The position numbers and the translations under genes are program-made. Below, piece by piece: positions 2,491 through 36,400 of a stretch of 64,000 nucleotides of DNA. Position 1 is the stretch's first letter, and each line of letters begins with the position of its first letter. The notes beneath the pieces were generated by a model, which ran no database searches, was not told the DNA's origin, and worked only from the letters and a program-made list of their open reading frames with translations. The stretch comes from Fimbriosthenelais zetlandica (taxonomy: Eukaryota): assembly GCA_977030845.1 (NCBI GenBank), contig OZ365109.1, positions 17,980,001 to 18,044,000 on the forward strand, read 5' to 3'.

Positions 2491-4900
2491 TAATTTTTTC
2501 TATTTATACATTTCAATACACAAAATTTAAGACAAAGGTCAAGGTCACTTGGAGCTAGGGGATCAAGGTAGCACCTGCAGCAGCCCCCCGCCCTCCACTG
2601 GCCACTTGGAGGGGGTCAGGATTATTGGAGAGAGACTTGCCTAAGTCTTTCTTTCATTAATCCTATTTTTTATTTGTAATGTTCAGTGAATAACTCTGCT
2701 GGTCAATCATAACAATGGCCTCTATTTAATGAGAAGAATGAAATGTTCAGCTTCTTTTTAATGAAAGCAATGACAAATCTCTAGTAATTGAAGCATTTGA
2801 GTCCACATGTAACAGTGAAACTAATATACCTCCTGGCACTGAGAAAATTAAATTAAGTATAAGATAGAGAATATCTGAATCTACAATTTGTAATACCTAT
2901 CCTGAGTTTACATGTGAGAGACGAGGCATAAAAAGTCCACACTCACCAATACTACCACTGTACTGACTACAAACCCAAAACAAACCTCTTATATAATAGG
3001 GGGGCAACGGGGGTTTCCCTTTTTTTTCATGTTAAACCAACCTCCAATGGTCTAGGGTGGTCTGGTATAATACTGAATGGAATTTTGATACTCACCTATC
3101 CTGAGTTTAGTTTTGTTCTCTCATATTTAAAAACATTAGCCTGAAATTGATTACTTTGACACAATAAGTGATTATCCAAAAGAATTATATATAGCCAAGG
3201 GGTTTGTGGTCAAGTCTAGGAGGAAACTCTCTTGTTGCCATGGCAGCAGGTCAGAATGGTGGGTGGGTGCAAGACTGGAGGATTAGAATAGAGGGCTAGG
3301 AGGCTGTGTTGTTATAGCAGTAAAGTACCAGTACTTTGCTTAGAGACAAGAGTCTAGACAGAAGTTTGAAAATGTTCACTTTACACATAGTGGAATAGGA
3401 ATTACAAAAAGATGGATTTAGGTGTGGAGTTGGTTTATGTGGGCCTAGAACAAAAGATTTTACTTTTTCTATGTTTGGAAAGTGAATTTTTGAAATATTT
3501 AAATTTCAAAGTTTATTTTAACAGAGTAACAGGCATTAGATAGATTTATATATTAAGTTTTTAAGTAAATATTAAGGTTTTAAGTATGTTTTTTGGTACT
3601 CATCTATGATTTTTAGTCTGCCTCTCAATACACATCTTTCTCTCACAGAGGGTCTTTGTTATGTACACAGGTTTTAGGCTGATTGTAATTGGCGACCTGG
3701 ACAGGAGGTAGATAATTGCCTTCAGTCTATTCCTATAAATTAATTCTATAATTATATTCTATATGAATCATCAGAATTCTTGGTAATGAAATTGAATACT
3801 TGATCTCTAAAGATAAACGCTGCCTGATTTAACGAGGTTAATCATTGAGGTGTGAGACTGTCTTGTAAAACTCTCCCGGGTACCGTATATCATGATGACA
3901 TTATAATGGCTAAGTGAATTTTTAAAGCTTAGTCTGGCAGGGGAAATGGGATTATTAATGATTACTGGTAACATTATGGCTAGTTTGAATTAGATCTATA
4001 GAGGTCTACTGTGTATTTCTATACAATATTATTAGTAGGTTTTCAAATCGACAGTATGTCTATGCATCTACTGGCGGGAGTAGGCCTACCACCTCGGGAT
4101 GCAGATTAAATTTTCGTATCGGGTGGAGTTTTTGTCTGAACCCTCTGCTCACATCAGCACCGGGGCACCGCACACTGACTGGTACATTAATATTCAGACA
4201 TAGATGTAAAAAAAAATTCAAGTGTCGCCGCCCCAAGCAACTAAGCCTAAGGGGCGGGATAGATGCTCCGTCGAGTACACTATTCAAACTTATCTAACTA
4301 ATAGGCAATCTAGTTTTAAAAATCTACCCAATAAATGAGCAGCCGCAATTTACATCTAATATTCTATAGGCCTACAGATCATTAATAGGCATTATTAGTA
4401 AGGGTTACTTAAGAAAATATAATCGGTCCATCGCATCTTTTGATTTTAAATAGCAAAGTTGGTTCTGCGACAACTTCCATACCGTTTATTGTTAAAATAA
4501 TGGATAAAACTCTTGCAGTTCCTTCTTTCTTTTATTCCCATGATACATCGGTCTCATTTCCATTTAAGTTCCACTATTGTTTGGGGCTTAGCACATATTG
4601 AAAAGCATTGAAAGAAATGCTAATATAGATGGAATACAGTCACTAAAGCGCTTTTAATATTATCACAAGCGCATTTGTGGTATGTAATTTCATTATGTCC
4701 GCTTTTGAGAAAAACAAACCATCCCTCTTTGTAAACTTTTTTTGTTGCGATCTTCCATTTCTATTTTTTTTTCTTTTTTTTAGTATTGCCAATTGATTCA
4801 AACGGTTATTACCAATGTAGGAGCTTACATTGAAAATAAATACATCCTTAGAGATAAGTGAATCATTGTCTACAGATTATTTCTAAAGGTCGGGCAATCC

Positions 4901-12202
<7,302 letters not shown>

Positions 12203-12269
12203 CTTGGATGTTTGAGTCTCTTTCCGACAACACTATCAGAGTGATGGTTGTCTCAATGGCGGACTCGTT

Positions 12270-12294
12270 GAAAGGACCGATGTATATCACGTGA
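12270..12294 (-). promoter_or_regulatory. Probable eEF2 TCT/5'TOP-type start site with adjacent E-box
   Basis: Minus strand reads TCACGTGA (12287-12294) ...GGTCCTTTCAAC; CCTTTC at 12270-12275 is about 70 nt before the ATG. eEF2 is an established TOP mRNA; the TSS position is inferred. Confidence 0.45.
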
Positions 12295-13824
12295 CTGGAG
12301 AGGTCGGGGCCCGTTGTGAAAACGAGGCTGGGGAGCAAGTGCGTGGTTGGATAGTCCCGCCCTCTGTTCTTGCGCAAGACCTGTTCCACGAAATGGGCTT
12401 TTTCGGGACTCTTTTCCTCTGTCGGTCTTACTCTACATTTTGGTGTTATTATAGGCCTAATAATGTGCGAAAAGAAACTTCTGTAATGCCCGATTTTATT
12501 TCATGATAGGCGTAGACATTAGATTATTTTTTCATGCTTTTACATTTTAGGCCCCATTAGGGGTCATTATTTATGGCCTAGTAGGGTGGGGGTAGTGGTT
12601 CGGGGAGGTGGGCGAAATTCGGGGGATCGAAGGTTGCGTATTCAAGGGGGCGATTTTTTTTATATTAAATGAACATAAATGTGTGTAGAAGGGTAGGGGG
12701 TGGGGGGGGGGGCATTCTGCTGCAACATATGGTTTTTTTTTCTTCAGATTATTCTTTTCGCTGAACCACGACCCCAACCCTGGCCATAAATAATGACCCC
12801 TCCGAAATTTCACTGTATGCCCTGCCGTACACTCCGCGCTTGCTCTGATCAGGCCATAATGCTGTTACTGCATTAGCTATAATATTAGAGGAAAAATTGC
12901 CAACAATAAGAATTACATGCGTAAAATTTATTGAAATAACAACAATTGTACGTTAATATTATACCGGTATCAGGATAAAAGTACCGTCTACAAAATCTAT
13001 GCCCCAGTAGTAGGCTATCGAAAAACTGAGAATTTATCAGCTAGTTAAAAAATTAGTTTTTATAGAAAAAACAAAAATGATTCAGTTCAGGACTACATAA
13101 ATTTGACAAAAAAAGTTATTCAAATGGCGAATGATTTAGGCCTAAATGTACTCGGCCAATATGCCATAACAGCCAATAACTTTCAGATAAAACGTGAATA
13201 CAGTTTGTTATTTTTTGTTTACGTATATATAAATAGAAATAGAAATACGCCTCATGTCAGGTTTCTCGATTCACGAATTGACTATTTTAACAAGTTTAAT
13301 AATAACAAATCTATTAATCAAAACAAAGGAAATGAGCAAGAATTTAAACTTTTTAATCTTTTCAGCAAATACAACAACTCAATTAAATAATCATATATTT
13401 TGGTACAGATCCAAATGCAAAGATTCCATTTCTGATGATGGATCAATAATATGAAATACGATTTTAAAAAGAAATTTAGGGACAGATGGATCAGTTACTG
13501 GATACATATAGAATATCCCATAGTGAAACGCTGAATTGAAAATCCGGAAGATATTTTAATACATGTATAGTATGTAAATTCTTGAAAGGTATTTCAAGAG
13601 GACAAGTTGTTAATCCTCAATAAAATAGACAAATTTAAATATAACAACCAGCTTCAGCATTTTACATAAAAATAGAAATGATCATGAATATGCAATTAAC
13701 AAAGGGGTTGAGAATAAACAAAAATGGTGAGCCTGAACTTGAACCAAGCAGCTGGTTGAACAGAACTCTCTATACTAAGCTCATCGTTATGATGCCTAGC
13801 AATTAAAACAATGTATAGATGATC

Positions 13825-17000: not shown

Positions 17001-19893
17001 AGCTACCTGTGACTACATGTAACTATAGATAATTTGATTCAACTTTGACTACCCGCGCCTTTGTCTACATAATAGTTTTACCGAAAAAGGTCTTATTTCG
17101 ATTTGAAACCTTATCTACTAACATTAGACCCTAGGCACCGGTCGACGTTTAAGATGGACAAAGAAGTATCATAAACAGACTTTTCCTGGAACATTATTCA
17201 AAAAATATATAATTAAAACAATGCACAGATTAGCATGACTTGCAGACTTGCTACCAGTATTTAAGGGCATGCAGAGCGCAAGGAAATCAAAAGCCTTTGG
17301 TTTTCCATTCATAAACTGCATGTAACCTTGTTACCATTATTCCACTCACCAACACAGAATTCTCTATTATACTATAGTCCATTAGAAGTTAGAATGCATT
17401 TTGAGCAATATCCATCACGATGAATTTTACTTATCATCAATGGTTCTTACAACGGTGCACACCATTAGATAGCAGTCTAGTTTCGGATCTATCTCTGGGA
17501 AAAGAAGAAAAATAAAAAACTCCAGTACCTGGCTACGAAATCTGCTCCAGGCTCGCATATTATATCTACAACTGTTAACCGACTTACTGTCTCAGTAAAA
17601 TGCTTCTAATGGTATAAGAAGGCAATGGAGGTTTTACAAATTTGTTACAAAATGGCAACAAATAACTCGTATCAGGCAACCCATTCAAATGTTTAGTTAT
17701 GCATCTAGATTTGGAATGCAGAAGTGTTTCTGTTTCTTAGTTATTCATCGTAATTTTTGGATGCAGCTTCCACAAATATTTACAGCTCTCATCAAAGTTC
17801 TATTTAAAATATCAATCGACACCTTTGAGTCTATTCACAATAGTTTTTCCCCTCAGAAATCACAGCAAACTTTTTTTTTGACTTTCCAAACATCTCTTAC
17901 TCCTTTTCCCGACAGGAACGATGAATTGGAGTATTAATAGTCCCAACATACAGAACAAAATATGATAAATTCTAACCACTATGTAAAGAGAGTAGCTAGA
18001 GTACAAATTTCTAAAGCAGGTGGTCATAGTTGTTAGTTGTTGATTCGAATTCTCAGTACTTGCCGAACTTATCTCCCAATAGGGCAGTGGCTTGTTAATT
18101 TTCTCTATGTTTAAAATAGAAAAAAAAATAAAACATTTCAGATTGATCAGAGGGAGGGTTGTAAATACGGTTTATAAGCAAGTGCCAGATATTGCCGCAA
18201 ACTATTACCAATGATGCTTTCTTAATGACTATCTATACCACTTAACAAAAAGGTAAAAACTATCCTACAGAGACCAGAGAGGATTTCTTAAATGTTCCTA
18301 TAAATTCCGCCAATTTCAGTATGAATACAAATGCCACTGCAAACAACATAACACAATGACGTGGCATAAAAAACAATTTCTAACAGTTTTTCTTTGAGAG
18401 AAATACACAATGTAATATGCGAGGCTAGTAAAGGTAAATAAGGATTTAGATAAACCTCGATTATTATGGAAGAACACACAGTATGTTTGAAGATTAAACT
18501 TTTTGAGGGGTTGATTAGAATATTGATAGACTCGGCCCAATGGCTTATGTAAGAATGGGCGAGTAAGCAGCCTAGTTTCCACATAATAATTTGACGAGCT
18601 TCCCGACAGTGGAATGATGATGATGTGCTGCAGTGACTCAATACTGTGCGGCTCCTGCTGTGATCTTTAATCTACTCAGAAGTAAGCGAGTAGTGCTGCT
18701 AAAGTTGACTGTAAATATAGTTGACGAAACAGTTTAAGGTAGTAACTTCGGGGAATACGTAGATGGAAGATCCCACTGGGACTAACTGATGAACAGCAGC
18801 ATGTCATCATATTCATATTAATGTGACAACGTCACACAAACCCGTTATCCTGCGGTTTCTTTGTAGAACAATTAAAATATATATCCCTATCTTTTTACAG
18901 GCCATCCCGGATCTACCAATGGACCGGTGATCTACAGGGGCCGAGTGATTTCAGTTTTTTTTGTTTTCTCCACATACATGCAGATGTAAGCTCAGCAAGT
19001 TTGGCTATAACTGTTTGTGCTTGCTTGTTTGGTTGGTTGCCTTCTGCAGAGGTTTTACTGTAGTTTTATGTCATCTACAGTTACTGTAGTCATTATCATC
19101 TACAGACCCGTCCTTCCGCTGGCTATCACAGATGTTAGAGAGTGGTCGGTCTTGTCCGCTCCACTAAATTCAGTCAACACGGTTGATTACAATTTCTCAT
19201 CAGATACTTTTTAAAAGCGTTTTTCTTTCTCTAAAGCTTCCCAATTTTTCCAAGTCACTTTTTTGGAATTGGTAAAGGTGGCCTTTCATGACAGTCTTTT
19301 TTTTCCCTACAATATCTTCAAAACGTTGTATGTACAGCAGATGATGGACAATATGAGCACCATGATAGTTAACAAGTTCTCTGATGATGACATTCAGTCC
19401 TGTGTCATTTTTTCTCCAGATCATTCCTGATTTAAAGCACCTTTTGTTATATTCGACCTTCTGTCCCGCTTGCAATTAACTGACCTGCAGTTGTTGAGCC
19501 TTCAATCCTGAATAGACGGGCTTTTGTGATTTGAACAATTCATTTACAACTTCACATTAAGTATCTTTGTTAGTCCCTGAGCGCAATACTCCCAGTTAGT
19601 GGCACTGGTGTCTGTCTATGAACCAGTCCGTCCTCATTCTTCTCAAACAGTTATGTAAAAATTGGCCTGGCATGGGTAAAGACTAAGAAAAACATTTTTT
19701 TCACATATTGCACAGACATCGTGTTAACAATGAATAATATTTGGGCTGGTTTTTTCTCTCTCCCGAAGACTGTCATGGAAAGGTTAAATAGTTCTTCAGT
19801 GGCACCACCTTACCGATCCCCAAGTTAGAATAAACCGGTAGCACAGCACTGGGTGCAGATGACTGGAATGGAATGGGTGGTGGGGATAGGCCT

Positions 19894-22754
19894 CTAGTAG
19901 GCTTGGTCTTGATGCAGCAGATCGAGATAAGCCGTCTCAGCATCAGCATGTGGGTTGGTGACAGCAGGGTGAAGCTCGCATTCCTTCAACGGTTCCCATT
20001 CTCGGCATAGACTATTGGAAATCTATAAAATGCAGGAAAAACGTTGGTTAAAATACGTAATACCAAGTACACTAGCAATATTATAAATAAAAGGTACGTA
20101 CAAGTAGGATATAAGTGACAATTTGATTCTTTGAATGTTTTTTAATTGATTTGTTTTTCTTTTTTATGTAATTATTCCACAAGCTGAATAAAACAATTAA
20201 CCAAAGCATGAATGTAAACTTGACTCACCTCCGTATTAAAAGCGCTGCCAACTTGTCCGAAAGTCATCCAAACATTGTTTTCATCGTCCTCTTCTATACG
20301 AGAAATACAACTTTGTGGGATGGCAAAATGGGTGAGGGTGGATCCGCGCAGTCTGGCAATGGCTATGACATCTTCGTCACAGACTTCATACCCTTTAAAA
20401 TGATGCGAAAAAAGATACAAATAGTCAGTAATATAACTTCATAAGACTCATGAATGAAATCATAAGATCAAAGTGGGGGTTCAAAATGACAGATTTCTCG
20501 TTGACCTCCGAATCTTAAAAAAATAGGACTATTATAGCTAGGCCTTCATTTTTTCTTACGGGTATCATAGTTTCAATGAAGAAGGTCTTTTTACGGATAA
20601 CATTTTTAATTTAGTGATTTAGGCCTATATTATAACAACAAAAATCACTGACCAATCAATGTGAAGCTGGAGAGCTTGGGGCACTTCCAGGCCATCATGA
20701 CAAAGGGATCTTCGTCAGTGACTACTTCGTACGTATTAGTTTGATGACCATCAACCATACCATCAACGATGTGCACGGACTTGAGGCTGTTGAAGGAATT
20801 CTGCGATATAAAATTCACCGCAGCTACGTTGATGTGTTGACAGAAGAACATCCTGAGGTGAGTGAGTGGTAGCGCAGGCCTGAGAATGTTGAGGAGACCT
20901 GTCGCCCCATCAATAGAATGGATGAGATTGATGGTCACTTCTAGGGTAGGATTGTAAGTGACCACGCACTGCCAGACTGAATTTGGGATATTTTGCCTAC
21001 CTGGTTCGATACCATGAACATGGATGATGAGCTTTTCCAGTTTGGCTCGGTTGTTCTGAGCGAAACCTTCGAGAAGCTCAGGAGTAACATAGTCGTAGTC
21101 AATGCCGAGAGAGCAGAGACGACGAAAATTGGAGAAGGCGGTAGATGGTAGATCAATCAATCCATACATGTCGGGGTCCTCCTTAATACTGGCAACATGC
21201 AAGATTTTCAAACTTTTGGCATGATGATCGGCCAACAAAGGTATCAGACTAGCACTATAGTCTGTCAGCTCTCCAATACAGCCAAGGGATAAATGCTTCA
21301 GGCCCCGGGACTTTTTCACTATCCCTTCAAGGGCATCGATATATCTGAAATGAGTTTTCAAAAAAGAATAAGAAAATTAGTTATTGACAGGCGCTAACAC
21401 AAATGAAATTAGATCTAGGCCTATAAAAGTGTCATGGTAGCCTATGATTTGAGTGGGGCTAATCAAATGCCTCTCTAACTAGCAGGGTCCTAATTTAAAT
21501 CAATTCTATGAAAGGGGAAAAAAAGCTCTCTTTAATAGGCTGCAATGGAGAGGTTACCGGTAGTCTTAAATTCATCAGATGGCGCCATTGGCAGTGTGAG
21601 TGACGTCATTGATGCCCAGATCTAGGCCTACAGATATTTTCTTGAAATAGATATAACTTGCTAAATATTCTATATTTTTTTACGAAATGTATTTCAGGAT
21701 AAATAATTCTTTTTTTTGTTTATAAAACCCTACATCACACTAACAGTTTCCCCTTTCCCCTTTAAATTAAATTTGGAAACCATGACCATAATTATCAAGT
21801 CCAGGTCCATGGCATGACCATGTCACATCAGTCATCATGATTCCTGTGTAGGCCTGGCTAGCTATTAATTAGGCCTACTATTAATTTTATTATAGGGGTT
21901 AGGAATAAAAGGTAGCCTAAGTCTACAAATTAAACCGTAAAACACATTCCCCTACGTCTCCTCCATCGCCTGGATATTTTCTCTTCTGTCTCTGTCAGTC
22001 CCTCCCTCCCCTCCTCTCACTGTTCATCCATCTCTCCCTTCCTTCCAAGCTGTTTTGCACCAAGCCAAGGTGAAGGTCATTCCCTATCACCCATCATTTC
22101 TGCGCAACATTGTTTGCGTCAAATTAACGCTGACGCATTGCACCAAATACGACCTAAACATAAATAAGACCATTAACTGTACCATGAATTCATCTAAAAT
22201 AAGGCTTTCTGATAGAACCTTATGAGGTTAGACGGCAGAGATGCATGTATGAACTGCGCAGTATGGTGGGGAAGCAGCCCATCCCACCCAGCTGTGGAGA
22301 GCACGTTCCTCCATGTTTACAAACATTGCCCCTGTCCTCCCCAAATTTCTCCCAGATGGCCTACTTACAAATCAATGGTGTTGCTGAGATTTCTATCGGG
22401 CCACGCTATCTGACAGCTTTGAGGTCGTATGACAAGTTTCTCCAGCTTCACATTTTCGCTGAGGATGTTCAATACGCGGAGACAATCAATAACATTGCCT
22501 TCGATTTTGCTGTTGAACTCCACCACGGCCTCCCGCACGAAACGTCCACACATATCCGCAAGGTGCTTCGTCCTCCTTCGTGTGCCCTGCTTCACTTTGA
22601 AGGAGATCTTCCTCCATATCATTGGATGAAATAGGCAGTTCCGCCATCGTTTACATGTCGACGTGCAGTTTACCCTGTCTGTTAAAGACAGGTACGAAAG
22701 TATCTCAATTAAAATCAAGCTCGGTAGCGTAGCCCACGAAGTGTTTGCCGCCAT
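19894..22754 (-). CDS. FBXO33: F-box only protein 33-like, 4 exons, 456 aa
   Basis: Exons 22369-22754, 20653-21344, 20229-20392, 19894-20022 (1371 nt, in frame). N-terminal F-box WATLPSLILIEILSYLSLTDRVNCTSTCKRW; degenerate LRR-like body; C-terminal EDPFVMMAWKC..L..GY......IAIARLRGS.L matches the FBXO33 block as I recall it. Confidence 0.85.
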
Positions 22755-24254: not shown

Positions 24255-27200
24255 TTAGTCGTCTCCACCAGATATCTTGGCCTGGATTGTTACTGTCACT
24301 TTGCGGAGAGCCGGAGCGACCTGGGGGTATTCCTGATTCAGGCGATCCACAATTGCGCCCAACGTGTGAGATCGGTCAATCTGCTTCTCTAGCTCGTTAT
24401 CCAAGGCTGTGTCAGCTTTGACCATGCGGGTGTATTTGCCATCTTTTGCTTGCTGTAGATACTTGGCTCGCTGCTGCTTCTGTAGCAAATCTTGCAAATT
24501 CTGTAGATATAACGTTATAGGGCGTCAAATAATTAAAGGTGAACATTTGGTAAAGATCAATTTTCAGCACAATTGATGAATACAATTTTGTTAACCTGAT
24601 ACAGTCATTGATAATAAATAAATTTCAAATATATTTTATATCATGTATTTTTTTTTAAATAATCCCCTGTATGGGAAGCCAAATCTAACCATATCATCTA
24701 CAATGAAGAATTTTGCCCTGACCTTTTGTTTCTGCTCCAGCAGTCTGTCAATGTCTCCGTCCAGGCTGTCTGCGGAACCCTGCAAGTGTTGCACATTCAG
24801 CTGCCGCTCCTCAAGCTGTTCACTCAGCTCCTGCTGATTCCCTCTCAGATCCTGAATCTCAGAATCACTCTGGTTGGCCTCCTGCAATGTTTACATTTTA
24901 GTGGTCATTTATTGGCCTTCCATCTCTTATTAACATACTCTATGGTTTGTATAGAGTCCATTCTGATCAACTGGAAAATGTTAGGGTGATCGAGGTGAGG
25001 TAGCAAAAATTGAAGGATGAGTTATAGACAGTAAGATGGTCACGTCATGATAGGTTTATAGCATATCCAGGAAATTTTATGAGACACATAAACAAAACCG
25101 AGAAGATATTCACAATTCAATAAAATACCCGAATCTATGTCTTGGTACCCAAATCGAGATGTCTGGGCCTGTGGTATAAGAGTACATTAATATATTTGAA
25201 TTATCAACTCACATGAATGGTACTTTTAATTTTCTTTTTCAGATCAGTGATCTGGCGCTGGAATGTGCCTTTTGTAAGCACCTTCTTATTCATCTTCGAT
25301 TGGGCATCCCCACGAGTAACAATCGTATCTCGCCTGAAATAGAATATTCAAGATGGTATGGTTCACTATGAATTGGCTTAATTTGGTCTCCACAGGCATT
25401 TACATCACCCCAATGAGTGTATACATACATTATATGAAGTATTACAAACTGTAGACATAATACATTAACACATTCTTTGCGTTCTCATTTTTCATTGAAC
25501 TATAATATAGATCATACCAATAAGCTATAGAAGCACTACTTTGGTCTCCGATGAAAAGTTTTTTTATCGCTAATTCTTTGAGTTCTCACCTGGACACCGC
25601 CTTCTCCATTTCCTGGATCATACGTTCTTGTTGTTTCATGAGTTGGGTGTAGCGCACCTGCATTCGGTGTATCTCAGCTTTCATGGCACGGATTTCCCCT
25701 TGTCCTGTCTCCGAATCAACAGCTGCTCTCGTTTCCCGAGCAAGTTGGGTTTTCTTCTCCCAGAGCATTATCTGACGCCTGAAAATTTGCATTTACATTT
25801 AAATCAAAATTATGTCAATCTATATGAATGTACATGTGTCCATACTAGCTTCAGAAGTAGCAACTGAGTCCCTTACATATGGATATTTGAAAATGTTCAC
25901 ACCAGGTAAATTTACTGGTTGTCTACTCACTCAGCTTCAACGAGGCTGTTCAGCAGGCGCTCCTTCTCTTCTCTCAAACCATCCAGATCTTCCTGCATTT
26001 GAATGGATTCTCTTTCTGCTTCCTGTAATATAAATCACAAAAACGTGACATGTGAAATGGCGAAGATGGTCGGCAACACCTTAGAAACAGTCCTCTGGTC
26101 CTATATTAATATTTGCTTATCCTTGAGCCTTAACAATGAATCTGAATATAAAAAAAGGTCTATGAGTGAAATATAATTATAGAAGGAACAGAAAAATCTA
26201 TATGTACGTACCCTTAGAGTGCCAATGAAGTCGTTCTCCATGAGAATGTTGCCCTGTTCCAGTACGTGCTCTGTACCGCGTTCATTGTGTAGCAGCATGT
26301 TCAGCTTGAGCATGTCATTCTGCATGTGACTGATGTTCCTCTCAAACTCACTGGTCTCAGTCAACTGGTGATTAATATCCCCTGAAAACAGGAATGATCT
26401 ACTTAAATGCACTGTCAAAATTTAGTTCACTTGTATTCGTTTTATGTACACATATTTTGTTTGTTTGCAAATTAAAATCGTTGACATTCTGGAATTTGCA
26501 ATTTTGAAATTCTTTGGTTTAATTTTGTTTATTCTTTTAAAATAATTTCTGTATGCTGACTGGAGTACACACGAACCTTCTATACGAAGTTTCTTCTGGG
26601 AGAGGATGGTCAGTTGTTTTTTAAGGTTCTCCACGTCTTTGCTTTGGTCTTCCTTCTCCTGGGTTAACCTCACAAGCTCACTCTGGTCTCTCAGCCACAT
26701 CTGCTGCAGTTCACCAATCTCCGCTTGTTCAGCATCAATCGACTTCTGAAGGGAGTTAATTTGGATCTCCAAAGGTCCAAGTTCCACACCCTGAAAATAT
26801 GTTAGCATAGTACATGTATAGGTTTTCATTTTCATATTTTTGGACATTTGATAACAATGGTTCTTTGTTTGTTTTTTAATTTAGGATTTTTATACAGCCA
26901 GTGTTATACAAGAATTGTATAGGCTTACGGGGCACCTTATTAGTGATAACTGGTATTAGAAAAGGGAGATTGACAAGGAAAGGTCTCATCTTGTCCCCAA
27001 TTTGTCTTTCAACAATGCAATTAATAGCTTCATGGAACCTTCAGACACTCACCCCAGCACCCGTTATCAGCTGTTCCATTCTTTTATTGTATTGGTCAAT
27101 GATTCCTTGTTTACGCTCGATGACGGCATTTCTTTTGATGATCTCTGTGTCGCTTCGTGTAATAATCTCATTCTTCTGACGGATCTCCTCGTCTAACTCG

Positions 27201-30200
27201 GCAAGAATACCGGCCAGTCTTTCTATTCTCATCCTGGTATTGGATATCTCAAGAGTGTCCCTCGATAGATGATTCTCCACCTCAGCTACTTGGGCATCCT
27301 GGATTAAAATGACAAAGGAATGAAGTGAGGGACAAATAGGAAACTTCAATAAGAAGTTCAATAACACCCAATCACTATTAACTATATAAAAACGTGTACT
27401 TCGGTCCAATTCAGAAAACACTGGAACTTTTATTTGCAGGCCTAAATCCCATAGGCTTCATCTAGAATCAAATTTTGTATGGAATTATTTACCAATGACT
27501 TGGTGTGAAGTTTCTTTCTCAAGGTGAGCTTGTCAGTATACTGCGAAGCCTTGTCCAATGTTAGTTGCGAACGAAGCATTTCCAAAATCTGGTCCTCCAA
27601 ACTCATCTTGTCCCTGAACTCCCGTTCTATTTGTTTTCGCAGAGCGTTGACTTCATTCTGTCGGAGTGTCTTGTCCTGTGGAAATTTAATAGAGAATAGT
27701 ATAACATTTGTAATTTTTGTAATTGCAATAATTGTAACTATTTCAATAATATATTCTAATCAGATATATTTCAGCAATAGAAAAAAAGGTGAAACTGTAG
27801 GCCTCCTCTCATTTGTGCCTATCTCGTAGATATTTTAAACAATTTATATTATTACCAGAGCAGTTTTGGATAATTAAGTTACAGATGCAATTTCTTGGCT
27901 TCTAACTTACCGTGTTAGCTCTGTTGAGGGCTTGTTCGGTTTCATGCAACATGCGTGAATAAGTTGCGTACTCATTTTTTAAGGCGTCATGTCTGTCCTG
28001 GCACGCTTGAAGAAGCCTTCTAATAGTACCAATGTCAATCTCTGTTTTATGGTTGATTGTCATCAATTTTTCGTTTTGCTCTTGCTCCTTGGAGATGGAT
28101 TTTTTAAACCCTTCTATTTCTGTCTCCAAAGACAGGATGCGTTGCTGTTGTTCACTGTAGAAATGCATTTAATAAAATATTAACTTAACATATATGTAAT
28201 AAGGATCTGTGATCCGAAATAAATCTACAGAAATAAATCTACAGGAAAATGCTTATGTCTACTTCACTACCACTTGTAAAATGTGATTCTGGCAATCAGA
28301 AACATGAAACATCACATTTCAGTATATTCCAGCGATACATCTACATTATTTATTTCTGAAGTCTGAATGGACTTACTGAAGAGCATCTTGCATGGCAGAA
28401 TGGGCTTCATCACGTCTACGCATACCAATGAGTGAGCTGTTCCACTGCTGGAATAACTGCTTCTTTTCCAAGTTTATTGCCTGAAACGAACCAAAAACCG
28501 GTTTTACATTACAGTTTCAAATAATGTTACAAATAGTTTCAAATATATTTGCACATATTATATAATAGAAATCCTACCTCTATTTCCATGTGGGCTTCAG
28601 ACAAAGCCTCTTTGGAGGCCTTCGTTTCGGTTGCTTGGGCGGAGAGTTGAACCTCATACATTGCAATTTCCTCTCGCAATTTATCCACACGTTCTACTAG
28701 TCGGTCCACGAACAAATCCTATCAAAATAATACATAACACTTGATCAATCTATGCCGAGAGATGGGGGGGCAAGTTGTAACTTTTTCTTACAAGGAAAAT
28801 AGTGGGATGATTGAGGGAGATTTATGATTATTATTGATCAGATGCGTCTAAAGAATTTTGTTACAATTTAATACAGTGTGCCTACCTGTTTTTGCTTGTC
28901 GAGTTCAGCCTTTCCAACTTCAGTGTCAGCCTTTTCTGCTGCTCGTTTCATTACAGATATATCAGATCGCACGTCTTCACGAGCATTATCCATGTAGTAC
29001 AGTCTCAACGCCAGATTCTCTACTTCCTGTCGGAGATCAGAACCTGGGAAATAAAAGAAATGCCATCATCCGTATGAACATCCAGCCTATGAACATTAGT
29101 GCACCACAATATAAGTAGCCACTGACGTATAATGTTGATTTTCCATAACTGTTCAGAGGCTTTGAATAACTTTGATAGAAATTGACATGATTCCAATGTC
29201 CATTATAACTTTTCCAGGATTTTCCCAAACTGTGGAAACCCTGATAATTAAATATACATGTTGAATTAAAAATGTGCCTTATTTATATCATCAGAGAGTG
29301 GCTTTTGGACACTCACCTTTCTTCCTCTCCTTGTTGACTGTAGTCTGGTTTCGCCTGTACAGCTCTTGTACTTCACTCAGCAGCTGATCTATTTGTGAAC
29401 GCTGCTGGTTAAGGCTCGTATACTGGTCGTGGGTTTTCTCCAGCATCATCTGATGCCGCGCCAGTTCCTGCTGAACACCATACAGCTCGACGCCGATGTT
29501 CTCACGGTCTGTAGACTTGTCCTTCATGGCCTCTTGCAGTTCACGTAGTTCCAATGAGACTTTCTCGTTTTGTTTATCAAGGTGGGACTTGAGAGCTCTC
29601 TGGAACCTTTGCATCAAGGGCTGGAAAAAAATTAAAAAATTGTAAGACCATGGTATATAAAATTTCTTAAAATACTTAAATAATTCATTATTCATTAACA
29701 GAGAAATTAAATTAATACAAAGTTTAAAGGTGAAAGAAGTATAAATCATGTTCATATGATGTACATGACCAGATACGTTAATAGAGATTAAAGGAGAAGG
29801 CAAACTATATTATTATCTCATCAGGAAATATTGAGCAACTAGGGTGTATTGCGTATATATATATATGAGTAATAGATGAAAGGGAATTTTCTTACATGGT
29901 CAGGGTCGAGGACCACCATCTCATTTTCACCTTCGCTCTGTTCATCGTCTGTTGTCTCCTCTTCCGCGGAAAGCTCTTCTTCTTGGTCACTTTCTCCAGC
30001 ATACAGGTCTTCCTGCATGGCCATGTCTGTCATGCCGGCGACTGGCTCATCTGTATATGGCTCGTCCTCCAACTGGGTCATCGACGGTGGATCTAAATAT
30101 GGACACAAATATTGTACATTAATTACTGCAAAAACATTGTACATTTTGCAGAAATACAGGTATGATTGATCAAATCTGAGGTTCAGTGAACTGTTTTTAA

Positions 30201-32469
30201 TATGTGTGGACATTTTTTTCTATGGCCATTCTGTCCAGCGTGCCAAACAGGTAGGTTAATGGACACGGAATATATTTAGCCTACTGTATAATAAATATGT
30301 TACAAAAAGATCAAGAACTCTCATTTACCTTGGTTAACTTGGTCACTCTGTGGTTTCTGTGCAGAAGACATCCTTGCCGGTGAGGCTCTATCTGAAGTAG
30401 GTCTACCAGATGGGGGCCGAGCAGAGGGTGGTCTCCCAGAAGCTGACTCAGGCCTACCAGATGTAGGCCTCTGACCAGATGTAGGCCTCTGCCCAGAAGT
30501 AGACCTCTGTCCAGATGTAGGTCTCTGCCCAGATGTATGTCTCCCAGAAGCAGGTCTCCCTGATTCAGGTCGTCCTGATTCGGGCCGACCTGAGGCGGGT
30601 CTCCCCGATGCAGGTCGTCCTGATTCGGGTCGACCTGAGGTGGGTCTGCCCGATGCTGGCCTACTAGAAGTTGGTCTATCAGCTACGGGTGATTCACCGG
30701 GTTTCGTGGCTGAAGGAGATTGTCCAGTTAAGATTAGTCCCTCTGAAAAAAATGACAGTGTAACAATAAAATTAGCATAGTTTTGACAGCATTACATTTC
30801 ATTCCAAAAAAAAGCATAGGCTATATTTAATTAGTTACCTAATTTTTAGGCTATATTAACTTAGAGAGAGACCAAAACCCCGATATGGTCTGGCCTGTAA
30901 ATTATAGTTGGGTTGTTATTATTTTTCATTAGGTTGGGCCACTCGACAAAAATTTATTTTCTAACACTGTAATATATGTGTATATATTATTATTGTATGC
31001 ACCCTCATCTGCTTTTTGAGCTGAGGACGGTCTTGATCTTGCAGGTGAGGCGGGCTTCGATCCTGCTTTAGATCCTTTAGGACTAGAACGTGTACCCGCT
31101 CCAGAAGCCGGTCTACTCCCAGCTGCGCCAGACGCCGGTCTACTGCCAGTCGCACTTCCAGGCCTAGACCTGCTGGCTGATCCAGGCCTTGATCCTGAAA
31201 ATTACAATACTAGAAAGGTTAATACATGCAAAAATATATTATTTATCTGACCGATGCTTAAAAGTGGACGATTCCACTAATGTCATTATGATATTATAAA
31301 ACAGTTTATTTTGAAGTGACTTAATGAGTCATTTAATAGGGTACTGTATCACACTGTACTAACTAGTTTCATGAATATAGACTACGTCATAGTACTCGTA
31401 ATTAACATTTAAAATGGACTGGTTAATTTGCTATCACCTATAAACGGGTACGCCTATGTACTTGTATAGTATTTATGTTTGAGTTAATGGGTTTAAGCAA
31501 CGACGTGACTGGGCCAATATTCAGTAGTCCATACATGTAGGCGATATATTATTATCTTAAAATACCTTTTTGCGAACCTTTACTAGCAGATGCAGGACGT
31601 GACCCTCTGTTAGCAGAAGTTGGCCGAGATGGAGGTTTTTCCGCTGAGCCTGAAGGTTCCTCATCGTTCATATCACCGGTGTCAAACTGGATTTTTAAAT
31701 GAGATTTGGCATTGTAAGAGAACAGAAAATAATTGAAAAGTTCGGCGAAATACTAGTAATAGTCGACAATAGACTTGTCAAGCTAGATCTTCTAGACTAG
31801 GCTACTGGTAGTACTAATAATATCTAATGAAACAATAACTAGATCTAACATTTTATGTAATAATTAATTTTAATTTATGTAGATCTACCAGTAATACTAA
31901 TAGGCGATAATATTAATAATACTCACCTCATTCAGAGCTGCTACCGTGAGTTTTGACACAACATCGTCCATACCTGCGCCGCCTGAGGGTCTGAAAAAGT
32001 TAAAAGATTTATAATTTATATTATAGATTTGTAACAGATTTGTTAATAATTTATTGTAGCCTAATGTAGGTGAATCAGAACATCATAAAATCTAGTACGA
32101 GTTTCTCCAATCTCGTAAGAGATATAGATCTAGAATTATTGTTGTAGTTTATGCCATCTACTGACCATGGAAACGAAAACCGCCCTTCAAATCAATGAAT
32201 CATGATGAACATCATGTAATTGTAAACAAACATGATTTTGCTGATTGAAAATTGAATGAAAGCTTCGAGATTTGGCGGCCACAAGAATTTTCTATTAAGG
32301 AAAACAACCCTTGGCTTTACAAATTAATATCCTCGAACGAAACTTCCATGAGTCCATAAATACGCTAGAGTTGTACCACTTACATTTCACTAAATTATAG
32401 CACGAAATCCACGGTAAAATCACTCAAAAGCAAACACAAAATGAACACTTACTTGTCTTGGTCCGCCAT
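24255..32469 (-). CDS. CCDC40: Coiled-coil domain-containing protein 40 (axonemal 96-nm ruler subunit), 20 exons, 1191 aa
   Basis: Exons 32453-32469, 31927-31990, 31566-31686, 31003-31194, 30329-30742, 29896-30092, 29317-29620, 28886-29043, 28578-28718, 28377-28480, 27911-28154, 27493-27675, 27053-27298, 26577-26790, 26212-26381, 25931-26022, 25590-25778, 25213-25333, 24723-24881, 24255-24500 (3576 nt, phases consistent). Diagnostic [19 protein letters not shown] and [39 protein letters not shown]. Confidence 0.95.
30393..30677 (-). repeat. Coding tandem repeat RP(A/T/E/P)SG(Q) in CCDC40 exon 5
   Basis: Translation reads [97 protein letters not shown]; 15- and 18-bp units. Confidence 0.9.
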
Positions 32470-32600
32470 CTTGTTTAATAGATGTTGTTGCTATGTGCAC
32501 TGAGTAACGGTATTTCTGATTGGCTGGGATCTTTTTAGCTCTAGCCAATGGCGTTTGGTTTTGCAACTGCAACGGAAGTGGCCCAGATGGTCTGTCAACA
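32470..32600. promoter_or_regulatory. Bidirectional promoter shared by CCDC40 and TBC1D16
   Basis: RFX X-box-like GTTGCTATG at 32487, GCAAC half-sites near 32563-32572, two inverted CCAAT boxes (CTGATTGGCT 32516-32525, GCCAAT 32544-32549) and ETS CGGAAGTG 32573-32580, between the CCDC40 ATG and a probable non-coding TBC1D16 exon ending at 32782 (donor GTAAGT). Confidence 0.65.
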
Positions 32601-33476
32601 GCAGTCGGAGGGTGTGTATGTCTATAATTTTTTCGGATTTCCTCTGCTTTTGCGTCAATATTTTATCGGTTTTATCTATCGAAAGTTAAAATATTGAAAG
32701 GTTCTTATATCTGCCTTGTAGACTACCTTCTGTTGGCTTTGGTGGTTCTTACTATTAGATATCTTTCGCAACATACGGAACAGTAAGTTGGCTTCGGCCT
32801 TCGCGTTGTCTTCAGGCTCATCTCGGGTTTCACTCGATCATTCATGAGTCGATGGGAACTCATTCAGATCTACTTACTAGGCTACTACTACTAGTACTAC
32901 TAATGTCTATTGTATAGACCTATCCTATGGTTATATTCATACAGTCATACTCATAGCCATAGTGTAGGGTATTAATAATATATCTATAATCTAGCTGGGC
33001 CCAAGTCATAGAAAAATTTTATTAGATGATTTATTAGCCTACCAGTGGCAGTGAGTCACATTAATCAAAGTTTGATGTGACAATTGACATTGTATTAGAT
33101 CTAAAATAAGCTGTTAACCCTCGTTTTCGACTTAATCTAAGAGTACTATTATTTTAGGAAATTTAGCCTACGGTACCGTTTCTAAATACCTTTGAGATGA
33201 ATTTTCACAGATAATATTATGTACTACATGTATAACAGTACCGTGGTATATTATTCATTGGCTATCTCTCTACTTCTATGATTATTAATTTAATAGGCCA
33301 TATTTGGGGCAAAACAAACTGCTTATCATTCACTAAAACACCTCACTATTTTTTCAGATGAGTTGAAGGATGTGTTCAACCCCAGCCCCAGGAAGAATTC
33401 TATGGAAGGCTCGTGGCAGTAGAACAAATAAAGGGCAATTCTAACAGGCATCTCCTGTGCAGGCCTATAGATTACC

Positions 33477-36400
33477 ATGGATGTGCTTCCAAACTTACCC
33501 ATGACGAATATGAATTTCACCAGCCTTTTTAAGAAAGCTACAGACCTGCTTGGATTTACCAGCCCTGAAAGATTGAGACCACCGCCACTAGATGGTGAAA
33601 TTATCTACTGCAAGAATAATGTCTGCGTCCATCCGCCTGCGGCTCTGAGGAAGGAAGGGGAGCATTTCCCTGGTTACTTGAATATTAGATCACAAGAAGA
33701 TTCGGTAAGATAATCATGAAAACTAAATTTATCTTTTTACCAATTATATTGAACCTAACACTTTAGATGGACATTGGTGAGCAACTGTATGGCCGAGATG
33801 TCACCAAATTTATAAAAAGTTGAATAAAAAATTCTTTTCTTTCGAAGTGTTATCCCCAGATTGAGAAAGAAAAAGTCAGATTGTCTTCCTGAAGTCATTC
33901 CTGGATAGAAATTTTGTAAAAAATAATTTTACCATATTATTTTACCACATGGCTCTTTGTCTAAAAAATATGATTAATTCTTCCCTTCATTATCCAGGTG
34001 TTAGGTTCGACTCTGATTCTAACGTGGATTCCTAATTCAACCCTGAGAAAGAATCCAAGGAGTATTGAGAACAGTCCTCGACATCCCAGCGTACCACTCC
34101 GTGTAAGTCCAAGACGTTCTCCTCGTCAAGAATTTGCTCGACCAGACTTCTCGTCAGTAATCAATCAAAACCAAAATTCATCTGATAAAATTGAGAATGG
34201 CGATGTCCTCAACAAAGGAGGTGGACCGGGGCTAGGTAATACTAGCAATCCAAACGGCACTGATTTTAGTGAAAGCAATGGACAATTGTCTGGCAGGATT
34301 ATCTATGATGAACGAACTGACTCGGTCTATGACCCAAGTGCAGGACACGAGGGAGATGGAGAAGAACAGAAAAGTTGTGAAACAGAGAACAAGAGTCACA
34401 GTTTACCATCAGAGGGGCAGCTATCCAGGATGCTCCATAAGAACCGTATTCAAGAAATCAAGAAAGAACGTAACAGCTCGAGCAGGTCCGTCACTAGCAT
34501 TGAGATGGAGGGGGACCAGCTGGTAGTCACCACAGAAATGGAGGACGATTCCATCTTTGAGGATGAAGTCAGTGAGAACTGCAATGACGACAAAGAATCG
34601 AGCAGCGAGCATCCACAGTATGTTAGTCGAACACATAAAGACTCGGGCATTGGAACCCTCACGTCGCATGATGCGGAATGCACGAGTTCGAGCAGCTCCG
34701 AGTACCCGAGTCCTACCAGTGAGCGGTATCACCGCATCTTGGGTGAGCTCCAGCAGCAGTCGGGCAGTGGTACGCCGCAACTCCAACAGTCCACCACAGA
34801 ATACACTCCACTCACTGAAGCAGCATTAGAAACACATACCAAAGCTCACATGGAAAAGTTGAAAGAATCTCTCAGTCTGCAGCTCGATCCCAGTACCAAT
34901 GCTCCGGTCCTGCTCCACACACCCGATATCTCTGTCAGCCCTGGCAGCTGTAGCTCTGGGTCCACCTCTGGGCCTGACTCCCGCCCACCCACCCCAATCA
35001 CTCCTCCTGATTCCCCTGGCCACCAAAGAAATCTCCTCTCCTCTCCAACCTACAGTGACGGCGGTGTGCAGAACATGACCTTCCCCCACAGCTCTGTCTC
35101 TTATGAACAGCAAGGAAAACAAGAACAAATAACGAACTCTACTCCAAAGAGGTCGGCTAAAGAGCAGGTCTGTGGGGTTTTCTCTGTGGATCTTGGTAAG
35201 TGTTTTGAAACACTATAAAATGTAAATAATTATGTTTAGGTTCTTGTGCACAATATGTAAGAATCCTGGTATTTTACTGATTAGGACTATATCAGATGCA
35301 ATTGTCAGATTGTATTTAATGTTTGAATATTGTTCTGACAAAATTTCTTCTGAAATAAGTAAGAATATAAACATAATTCCAAACTCAGTTACTTTGTAAA
35401 AACGGATAATAACCTTTGAATAGACAACAAATATTTTAAATTTAATAGCAGAAATATGACTGTGAAAATACTCATTCAGATTAAATTTTGTTTTTTTAGG
35501 TTTTTGCTAATTTAGTTTGAAATTCACATGGTAAAATATTTTTTACAAATATCCCTGTTACAGGTCAGATGCGCTCGCTCCGTGTGTTCTATTCCAACGA
35601 TTCATGCACCAGTGGCCAACTTGTTATCGCCAGCAGAGAAAGTCAGTATAAGATTCTCCACTTCCATCATGGTGGCCTCGATAGACTTGCTGAGGTCTTT
35701 ACTGACTGGAAATTTCTCGCAAAGCCAAACGAAAAGGTGAGAAGGGACTTCACATCGATAAAAACAATCTTTTCAAACAGATCTAACTTATTCTGATAAT
35801 TCATGAAGCACCTGATTTACCTCATCTCCTCCCCTTCATTATTGGGACTGCCAATAAAATTTTGGATAAAAATTTGTGGATACCAATTTTTTTCCCGTAG
35901 ACTGATGAGTGAATAGCTGAAGCGCCAAATACCCTTTAAGCGTTTTGTTTGACATGTCAGAGAAAATAGGAGGTGAATTAATATGATTTTAATACTATTA
36001 CAGGGGAAAGAAGTTGATCACATGTGTGAACAGTTCTCGGTCATCCGCCCATACCTGCCCAAAGAACAAAGCCATCCAGAGGAGGGCGCTTATGAGACAG
36101 TCAACGAGGACACCTGGAAGCAACACATGAATGAGATAGGGCAGATAGAAGATGATCTCAACTTGAGGAAGGTAAGCACGTTATCTTGTTATTTTGAGTA
36201 CTTCTCAAGATAACAATTAGGATAACCTTGTAAGTGTTAAGCCAGCACTCCACTCTTGCGATTTTACTTGAAACACAACTGCGACAAAGGTGATGCTTGT
36301 GTCCCAATGAAGAATGTACCAGTATAGAACTTAACTTAGGCCTTGGACACTTTGACCACAAACATCACGTTTGTCGCAAGCAAAATTGCAGCAGTAGAGT

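What the first reader, a model, noticed from the sequence alone, without database searches (positions are those of the whole stretch)
32453..33704. CCDC40-TBC1D16 head-to-head pair, matching the human 17q25.3 arrangement
Seen: divergent genes with roughly 100-150 bp of shared promoter, an X-box-like site on the ciliary-gene side, two inverted CCAAT boxes, and an ETS site on the TBC1D16 side. From memory, human TBC1D16 and CCDC40 are also adjacent, divergent and under about 1 kb apart. Inference: a bidirectional promoter conserved between an invertebrate and mammals, hinting at co-regulation and a possible ciliary trafficking role for this Rab-GAP.
Basis: partly seen in the sequence, partly recalled or inferred. 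Interest (0 to 1): 0.7.

Follow-up and report, generated by a model that had tools for sequence, protein, structure and literature searches.

The report
Ancient head-to-head CCDC40–TBC1D16 gene pair
A cilia-ruler gene (CCDC40) and a Rab-GAP gene (TBC1D16) start back to back about 1 kb apart here, as they do in a brachiopod, a frog, a bird and humans, so this is an old conserved gene pair of a known kind, with no evidence that the Rab-GAP works in cilia.

Summary
The gene identities and the divergent arrangement are confirmed. CCDC40 runs on the minus strand (ATG 32469, exon 1 32469-32453). TBC1D16 runs on the plus strand (ATG 33477, first coding exon to 33704). The two ATGs are 1,008 bp apart.

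The core 32487-32630 holds two consensus CCAAT boxes in opposite orientation, 26 bp apart, plus a CGGAAGTG ETS site. That cluster occurred in 0 of 400 simulated sequences. The "X-box" is only a 2-mismatch match, which is chance level in this window. No RNA run was listed, so neither TSS could be measured. Long ATG-free tracts on both strands and a GTAAGT donor at 32783 fit a TBC1D16 non-coding exon starting near 32620-32650.

The same 5'-5' adjacency holds in:
- Lingula, where the two genes interleave;
- Xenopus tropicalis (19.1 kb between ATGs);
- Grus americana (7.4 kb);
- human (TSS distance 795 bp in a published table).

It is absent in Capitella and Priapulus. In Babylonia the two genes' longest contigs differ in length, suggesting different chromosomes. 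Amphioxus and a starfish are unresolved.

This is a new member of a known class, the conserved 5'-5' microsyntenic pairs. Co-regulation and a ciliary role for TBC1D16 have no support: in a mouse heart dataset the two mRNAs change in opposite directions.

The parts
24255..32469 (-). CCDC40 coding region, from the ATG at 32469-32467 to the stop at 24257-24255.
   Evidence: tblastn with vertebrate CCDC40 proteins gives 12-13 collinear HSPs from 29620 to 24267. PDB phmmer with the exon 29620-29291 finds CCDC40 chains 9fqr and 8j07 at E 2.6e-20 and 2e-16.
32453..32469 (-). CCDC40 exon 1: 17 coding nt (MADQD plus 2 nt), with donor GTAAGT at 32452-32447.
   Evidence: Read from the sequence. The phase joins exon 2 to give ...DK|PSGGAG.
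31927..31990 (-). CCDC40 exon 2, with acceptor tttttcag and donor GTGAGT.
32487..32508 (.). X-box-like composite GTTGCTATGTGCACTGAGTAAC: two overlapping matches to GTNRCCNNRGYAAC, each with 2 mismatches.
   Evidence: Matches at this stringency occur at chance frequency in the window (57 vs 54.9).
32517..32525 (-). Consensus CCAAT (NF-Y) box AGCCAATCA. It reads CTGATTGGCT on the plus strand.
32543..32551 (+). Consensus CCAAT (NF-Y) box AGCCAATGG, 26 bp from the first and in the opposite orientation.
   Evidence: Cluster test.
32572..32580 (+). ETS/GABP-type site ACGGAAGTG.
   Evidence: It is one of only 3 CGGAAGT cores in the window.
32623..32629 (+). TATA-like TATAATT, about 30 bp before the proposed TBC1D16 start.
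   Evidence: Read from the sequence. Inference only.
32470..32771 (-). 302-nt tract with no ATG in the CCDC40 sense, directly upstream of its start codon. It marks the possible extent of the CCDC40 5'UTR and TSS zone.
   Evidence: Only 0.15% of inter-ATG gaps in the window are this long.
32621..32782 (+). Proposed non-coding exon 1 of TBC1D16. The TSS is not mapped and is probably near 32620-32650. The exon ends at donor ACA|GTAAGT (32783-32788).
   Evidence: ATG-free tract 32621-32843 in the plus sense, in the top 0.7% of gaps. Consensus donor read. No RNA evidence.
32873..32885 (-). Best X-box match in the intergenic interval, GTAGCCTAGTAAG (1 mismatch, 1-nt spacer).
   Evidence: One such site in 1.6 kb is expected fairly often by chance.
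33255..33263 (-). Third consensus CCAAT box, 215 bp upstream of the TBC1D16 ATG. It could mark an alternative proximal promoter.
33358..33476 (+). TBC1D16 5'UTR part of the first coding exon. Candidate acceptors are at 33357|33358 (which leaves three uORFs) and 33462|33463 (which leaves no uATG).
   Evidence: Read from the sequence. ATG positions.
33477..33704 (+). TBC1D16 first coding exon (MDVLPNLPMT...DGEIIYCKNNVCVHPP...QEDS).
   Evidence: tblastn against TBC1D16 of Capitella, Lingula, molluscs, amphioxus, dog and frog gives 50-76% identity.
33477..38713 (+). TBC1D16 coding region, 10 coding exons.
   Evidence: Collinear tblastn. Pfam RabGAP-TBC at E 6e-14. Arg finger VEKDVVR and Gln finger YTQ are present.

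Best explanation
The interval is the 5'-5' junction of two single-copy genes. CCDC40 is a subunit of the axonemal 96-nm ruler. TBC1D16 is a Rab4A GTPase-activating protein. Their start codons are 1,008 bp apart with nothing between them.

The most likely layout is a compact divergent promoter region at about 32470-32650:
- CCDC40 starts within the ATG-free tract just upstream of its ATG.
- TBC1D16 starts near 32620-32650.
- TBC1D16 transcribes a short non-coding exon that ends at the GTAAGT donor at 32783 and splices to 33358 or 33463.
- Two NF-Y CCAAT boxes and an ETS site sit between the two starts.

Shown: the gene identities, the orientation, the motif cluster, the ATG-free tracts, and the same 5'-5' adjacency in a brachiopod, a frog, a bird and human.

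Inferred: the TSS positions, the use of the motifs, and the reason for retention.

The pair most likely dates to before the protostome-deuterostome split. It has probably survived because the two 5' ends are so close, or even interleaved as in Lingula, that few breakpoints can separate them without damaging a promoter. I read it as a conserved ancestral microsyntenic pair, not as a sign that the two proteins work together.
For: Identities:
- CCDC40.
- TBC1D16.

Geometry.

Motif cluster: unique in the window, and 0 of 400 simulations produced one.

ATG-free tracts: 302 nt in the CCDC40 sense and 223 nt in the TBC1D16 sense, in the top 0.15% and 0.7% of gaps.

CpG observed/expected rises to 0.85 over 31000-33000, against 0.59 for the window.

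Synteny:
- Lingula: CCDC40 exons lie head-to-head with TBC1D16 and the CDS ranges overlap.
- Xenopus tropicalis, CM004452.2: CCDC40 ATG at 32,896,104 (minus) and TBC1D16 ATG at 32,915,213 (plus), with no CDS between.
- Grus americana: TBC1D16 (minus), then 7.4 kb, then CCDC40 (plus), GAA and a sulfatase/SGSH-type gene.
- Human: TSS distance 795 bp (PMC3815023 Table S1).
- Mouse and cattle coordinates are adjacent.
- Both genes' longest contigs have the same length in nine further tetrapod species.

The class is described in PMC3514665: 54.8% of conserved ancestral pairs in human are 5'-5'.
Against: - No transcript evidence exists for either TSS; no run was listed.
- If the 33358 acceptor is used, the TBC1D16 5'UTR carries three uORFs.
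- A third CCAAT box at 33255 could mark a separate proximal TBC1D16 promoter.
- The CCAAT and ETS motifs are not found at the junction in Lingula, Grus or meerkat under the same strict patterns, so a conserved shared element is not shown.
- The linkage was lost in Capitella and Priapulus, and probably in Babylonia, so any constraint is not absolute.
- In Lingula the 5' ends overlap rather than share a gap.
Confidence: 0.7

Rival explanations
1. There are two independent promoters. TBC1D16 starts just upstream of its ATG, at about 33270-33460, near the third CCAAT box. CCDC40 starts near 32500. Nothing is shared, and the adjacency persists by inertia because the gap is a very small target for rearrangement.
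For: - A consensus CCAAT box lies at 33255-33263, 215 bp before the TBC1D16 ATG.
- uATGs at 33358, 33370 and 33402 argue against a long unspliced leader but allow a TSS after 33404.
- The CCAAT and ETS motifs are not conserved at the junction in other species.
- The linkage was lost in several lineages.
Against: - The strongest promoter-like cluster lies at 32517-32580, not near 33477.
- The plus-strand ATG-free tract ends at a consensus donor, which is hard to explain without a non-coding exon.
- CpG observed/expected is lowest (0.18-0.30) at 33200-33600.
- Even in this model the two TSSs are under 1 kb apart, so the pair still meets the usual definition of a bidirectional pair.
Confidence: 0.2
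2. The shared promoter co-regulates both genes in ciliated cells, and TBC1D16 has a conserved role in ciliary trafficking. That functional coupling is why the pair is kept.
For: - Deep conservation of the 5'-5' arrangement.
- X-boxes lie at the CCDC40 5' end in meerkat, Grus and Xenopus, close to where TBC1D16 must start.
- Conserved 5'-5' pairs are enriched for co-expression in general (PMC3514665).
Against: - No paper found in the library links TBC1D16 to cilia.
- The only function I found recorded is Rab4A GAP in receptor recycling.
- Ccdc40 and Tbc1d16 mRNAs move in opposite directions in mouse embryonic heart.
- The X-box-like site in the window is at chance level.
- Capitella and Priapulus still encode both proteins but have separated the genes.
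Confidence: 0.08
3. The two transcription units overlap antisense, as in Lingula. The CCDC40 TSS lies to the right of the TBC1D16 TSS, up to about 32771, so the two 5'UTRs overlap and the arrangement is interleaved rather than a gap with a shared promoter.
For: - The CCDC40-sense ATG-free tract reaches 32771, beyond the proposed TBC1D16 start. A 151-nt stretch (32621-32771) lacks ATG on both strands.
- In Lingula the first coding exon of CCDC40 and an X-box-like site lie inside TBC1D16 intron 1.
- The best X-box match in the window is at 32873-32885.
Against: - The CCAAT/ETS cluster sits between 32517 and 32580, the usual place for a core between divergent starts.
- There is no transcript evidence either way.
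Confidence: 0.12

Closest known systems
Human TBC1D16-CCDC40 divergently paired genes at 17q25.3 (PMC3815023, Table S1)
   Same: The same two orthologues, in the same 5'-5' orientation, with a gap under 1 kb. Human TSS distance is 795 bp. Here the ATGs are 1,008 bp apart.
   Different: - In tetrapods the TBC1D16 start codon lies far from the junction: 7.4 kb between ATGs in Grus, 19.1 kb in Xenopus, and more than 10 kb in meerkat. Here it is 1 kb away.
- Vertebrates have GAA downstream of CCDC40. Here the downstream neighbour is an F-box/LRR-like gene.
- Meerkat and Grus carry a canonical X-box upstream of CCDC40. The window does not.
Conserved ancestral microsyntenic pairs of 5'-5' type (Irimia et al. 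2012, PMC3514665), for example HSPD1-HSPE1
   Same: Unrelated genes kept adjacent and divergent across phyla, with a very short intergenic distance.
   Different: - Whether this pair is in that paper's list could not be checked, because the supplement is not held.
- Co-expression, which is shown for HSPD1-HSPE1, is not shown here and is contradicted in one mouse dataset.
RFX/FOXJ1-driven promoters of motile-cilia genes (X-box GTNRCC N0-3 RGYAAC near the TSS)
   Same: CCDC40 of meerkat, Grus and Xenopus carries such a site within 350 bp of the ATG. Lingula has GCCATGGCAAC about 210 bp upstream.
   Different: In the window only 2-mismatch sites lie near the ATG, and a 1-mismatch site lies 400 bp upstream. 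Neither is above chance.

Membership tests
CCDC40 (96-nm axonemal ruler subunit) | Collinear similarity along the coiled coil to named CCDC40 proteins. | tested here: met
   12-13 collinear tblastn HSPs with Dendrobates and Hemitrygon CCDC40.
CCDC40 (96-nm axonemal ruler subunit) | Closer to CCDC40/FAP172 than to the paralogous ruler subunit CCDC39/FAP59. | tested here: met
   The six best PDB matches are four chains deposited as CCDC40, FAP172 (7ju4) and one unnamed 'coiled-coil protein' (8tek), with E from 2.6e-20 to 3e-3. No CCDC39 chain was listed.
CCDC40 (96-nm axonemal ruler subunit) | Sits on the doublet microtubule with CCDC39. | not testable with these tools
   Needs cryo-EM or localisation.
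TBC1D16 (Rab4A GAP) | A TBC domain with the catalytic Arg finger (IxxDxxR) and Gln finger (YxQ). | tested here: met
   Pfam PF00566 at E 6.2e-14. VEKDVVR. YTQGMSD.
TBC1D16 (Rab4A GAP) | Orthology to TBC1D16 rather than to TBC1D15/17, including the N-terminal region. | tested here: met
   All 10 coding exons are collinear with proteins named TBC1D16 from annelid to dog. The solved paralogues TBC1D17/15 match only the TBC-domain exon that was queried, at E 1e-13 to 1e-10. No tree was built.
TBC1D16 (Rab4A GAP) | GAP activity on Rab4A. | not testable with these tools
   Known for the human protein only (Goueli 2012, cited in PMC9418685).
Bidirectional (divergently paired) genes | Head-to-head orientation with no gene between. 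| tested here: met
   Only three short ORFs of 50-64 aa lie in the gap; none was searched for homology.
Bidirectional (divergently paired) genes | TSSs less than 1 kb apart. | tested here: inconclusive
   The ATGs are 1,008 bp apart, so the criterion is met unless the 5' ends overlap. No RNA run was listed.
Bidirectional (divergently paired) genes | Shared cis-elements or co-expression. | not testable with these tools
   The motif cluster is present but its function is untested. A mouse heart dataset shows opposite changes in the two mRNAs.
Conserved ancestral microsyntenic pair (CAMP) | Adjacency in distant animal clades with the orientation kept. | tested here: met
   The window, Lingula, Xenopus, Grus and human. 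Lost in Capitella and Priapulus, and probably in Babylonia.
RFX target promoter | A canonical X-box within a few hundred bp of the TSS. | tested here: not met
   In the window there are only 2-mismatch sites at 32487-32508, at chance frequency, and a 1-mismatch site at 32873. The feature is met in meerkat and Grus.

The most novel reading that the evidence does not exclude
The CCDC40-TBC1D16 junction has been kept since the bilaterian ancestor because the RFX/FOXJ1-responsive CCDC40 promoter and the TBC1D16 promoter share elements. TBC1D16 would then be co-induced in multiciliated cells, and Rab4-dependent recycling would be a conserved, so far unrecognised, part of motile ciliogenesis.
Probability: 0.08. 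Interest if true: 0.6.

Novelty: new member of a known kind. Interest (0 to 1): 0.3.

Why it matters
The finding adds one well-documented case to the list of unrelated gene pairs kept head-to-head from spiralians to humans.

It also shows how the junction changes while the linkage holds. It is compact in this genome, interleaved in Lingula, and stretched by a long TBC1D16 5' intron in tetrapods.

For annotation, it fixes the 5' ends of both genes in this genome.

For biology, it gives a cheap hypothesis to test in existing single-cell atlases: is TBC1D16 co-induced with CCDC40 in multiciliated cells? The present evidence leans against this.

Tried and rejected
- **RNA evidence.** The look-up of sequencing runs was asked twice, for the junction (rna) and for the 1.2-kb exon (any). 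None was listed (one search was busy), so read laying was never usable.
- **Phylogenetic footprinting.** I used the two closest relatives in the protein collection. L004 (70% identity in exon 2) does not reach exon 1. L005 (90% identity in exon 1) shows no DNA conservation upstream of the ATG and no CCDC40 exon within 8.8 kb. It therefore says nothing about the promoter, and its synteny stays unresolved.
- **Transcript contigs from the same species.** The best full-length TBC1D16 in the collection is only 59% identical.
- **CDS-only gene tables.** The look-up of encoding contigs gives CDS ranges only. That made amphioxus, Acanthaster and meerkat uninformative on the TSS gap. The ray look-up returned no DNA.
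- **CpG observed/expected.** It gave only a broad rise over 31-33 kb, no sharp island, and no clear difference between the two gene bodies (0.63 vs 0.56).
- **Irimia 2012 supplement.** It is not held, so I could not check whether the pair is already in that list.
- **Second bidirectional-promoter paper.** The supplements of PMC2688522 do not name either gene.
- **A coordinate slip of my own.** My first translations were offset by one base. The correct ATGs are 33477 and 32469.


Full report
**What is in the interval**

On the minus strand the sequence reads ATGGCGGACCAAGACAA followed by GTAAGT. That gives a start codon at 32469-32467 and a 17-nt coding exon ending at 32453. The two left-over bases join the first base of the next exon (31990-31927, preceded by tttttcag). 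The result is ...DK|[21 protein letters not shown], so the splice phase supports the model.

On the plus strand an ORF opens at 33477 (MDVLPNLPMT...) and runs to a GTAAGA donor after 33704. The finding's coordinates are therefore the outer ends of the two first coding exons. The start codons are 1,008 bp apart. Only three short ORFs of 50-64 aa lie between them; they were not searched.

**Gene identities**

A minus-strand exon (29620-29291) matches the CCDC40 chains of the solved bovine and human axonemes (9fqr, 8j07) at E 2.6e-20 and 2e-16. It also matches Chlamydomonas FAP172. No CCDC39 chain was listed.

A whole-library phmmer with that exon returned proteins that NCBI and UniProt name CCDC40. 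These align collinearly in 12-13 pieces from 29620 to 24267.

The plus-strand gene has a RabGAP-TBC domain with the Arg finger VEKDVVR and the Gln finger YTQ. Ten coding exons are collinear with proteins named TBC1D16, from Capitella, Lingula, molluscs and amphioxus to frog and dog. The nearest solved paralogues are TBC1D17 and TBC1D15.

Best similarities are to annelid, brachiopod, nemertean and mollusc proteins. The genome is therefore most likely from a spiralian.

**The motifs**

- Two consensus NF-Y boxes (RRCCAATSR) lie at 32517-32525 (minus) and 32543-32551 (plus). They are 26 bp apart and point away from each other.
- An ETS/GABP-type ACGGAAGTG lies at 32572-32580.
- Each motif alone is as frequent in the window as in shuffles.
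- The cluster of two CCAAT boxes plus a CGGAAGT core within 100 bp is unique in the 64 kb. It appeared in 0 of 400 first-order Markov simulations. Two CCAAT boxes within 40 bp appeared in 21 of 400. The test was defined after seeing the cluster, so it is supportive rather than strict.
At that stringency the window holds 57 matches against 54.9 expected. It is a resemblance, not evidence.
- A 1-mismatch site lies at 32873-32885.

**Where transcription may start**

No sequencing run was listed for this DNA, so the TSSs are inferred from sequence alone.

- In the CCDC40 sense, the 302 nt just upstream of its ATG (32470-32771) contain no ATG. Only 0.15% of inter-ATG gaps in the window are that long.
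- In the TBC1D16 sense, 32621-32843 (223 nt) contain no ATG, which is in the top 0.7% of gaps. A consensus donor ACA|GTAAGT sits inside that tract at 32783.
- Candidate acceptors are at 33357|33358, which leaves three uORFs, and 33462|33463, which leaves none.
- TATAATT lies at 32623-32629.
- CpG observed/expected is 0.85 over 31000-33000 against 0.59 for the window.

They also fit a core of roughly 150 bp between the two starts. They do not prove it.

A third CCAAT box at 33255-33263 allows a separate proximal promoter. The overlap of the two ATG-free tracts allows overlapping 5'UTRs.

**Conservation of the arrangement**

Note that the look-up of encoding contigs reports CDS ranges, not transcripts.

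| Species | Result |
|---|---|
| Lingula anatina | CCDC40 exons lie head-to-head with TBC1D16. The first coding exon of CCDC40 (ATG at L002 11634), with GCCATGGCAAC about 210 bp upstream, lies inside TBC1D16 intron 1 (10247-12741). The genes interleave. |
| Xenopus tropicalis (CM004452.2) | CCDC40 ATG at 32,896,104 (minus) and TBC1D16 ATG at 32,915,213 (plus). Divergent, 19.1 kb apart, no CDS between. |
| Grus americana | TBC1D16 (minus), a 7.4-kb gap, then CCDC40 (plus), GAA and a sulfatase/SGSH-type gene. |
| Meerkat | CCDC40 is followed by GAA. No CDS within 10 kb upstream, which fits a long TBC1D16 first intron. |
| Human | Listed as a divergently paired gene with TSS distance 795 bp (Table S1 of PMC3815023). 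|
| Mouse, cattle | Published coordinates place the genes side by side. |
| Nine further tetrapods | The longest contigs recorded for the two genes have the same length. |
| Capitella | TBC1D16 spans only 3.4 kb. No CCDC40 exon in the 10 kb upstream. |
| Priapulus | An EF-hand gene lies directly upstream of CCDC40. |
| Babylonia | The longest contigs recorded for the two genes differ in length (102.9 vs 58.0 Mb). |
| Amphioxus, Acanthaster | No CDS within 10 kb upstream of TBC1D16. Unresolved. |

**Promoter elements across species**

Canonical X-boxes lie just upstream of the CCDC40 ATG in meerkat (GTTACCATGGCAAC, 336 bp upstream) and Grus (GTCGCCTGGCAAC, 227 bp upstream). Xenopus has a 1-mismatch site beside a CCGGAAGT. 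RFX control of CCDC40 therefore looks general.

The CCAAT/ETS cluster of the window is not found at the junction in Lingula, Grus or meerkat under the same strict patterns. No shared element is shown to be conserved.

**Interpretation**

The pair is an old 5'-5' linkage that predates the protostome-deuterostome split. It belongs to the class described by Irimia et al. (PMC3514665), in which 54.8% of conserved ancestral pairs in human are 5'-5' and short gaps are enriched.

The likeliest reason for retention is mechanical. The 5' ends are so close, or interleaved, that few breaks leave both promoters intact. Repeated losses show that the constraint is moderate.

The step from linkage to a ciliary role for TBC1D16 is not supported:
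- No listed paper links the two topics.
- The only function I found recorded is Rab4A GAP.
- In mouse embryonic heart Ccdc40 falls 4.03-fold while Tbc1d16 rises 1.99-fold.

**Verdict**

The synteny claim is right and, for human, already published. The cross-phylum conservation is a new member of a known kind. Interest is modest.

Noticed in passing
window 3234-3247: A near-perfect palindromic X-box, GTTGCCATGGCAGC (1 mismatch). It is much better than anything at the CCDC40 junction. It lies in a stretch with no obvious ORF, between an MBD-like ORF (920-1141, minus) and the eEF2 region.
   Followed up: partly
L002 (Lingula) 10001-12741: The first coding exon of CCDC40 (ATG 11634, donor at 11599) and an X-box-like GCCATGGCAAC (11846-11856) lie inside TBC1D16 intron 1. 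The two genes interleave rather than share a gap. A 7tm_1 receptor gene is nested in a later TBC1D16 intron (18537-20036, minus).
   Followed up: partly
L006 9652-9665; L008 9762-9774; L007 9984-9996: X-boxes upstream of the CCDC40 ATG in meerkat (GTTACCATGGCAAC) and Grus (GTCGCCTGGCAAC), both canonical, and in Xenopus (GTCGCTTAGCAAC, 1 mismatch, next to CCGGAAGT).
   Followed up: yes
L007 100435-103658: Xenopus tropicalis has a second, CCDC40-like gene (1012 aa) in tandem just downstream of CCDC40.
   Followed up: no
window 30324-31201 and 31560-31680, minus strand: The N-terminal CCDC40 exons are made of repeated (S/T)GRP(A/E/T)SGRP units rich in Arg, Pro and Ser, followed by an acidic exon (29900-30213). 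The repeat ORF carries no ATG, GTG or TTG, so the ORF listing did not show it.
   Followed up: partly
window 33358-33476: Three short upstream ORFs (ATG at 33358, 33370 and 33402) precede the TBC1D16 start codon if the 33358 acceptor is used. The 33463 acceptor avoids them all.
   Followed up: partly
window 20645-22754, minus strand: The gene downstream of CCDC40 is F-box/leucine-rich-repeat-like (MAANTSWATLPSLILIEILSYLSL...). In bird and meerkat that position is held by GAA. Only the CCDC40-TBC1D16 junction is shared with vertebrates.
   Followed up: no
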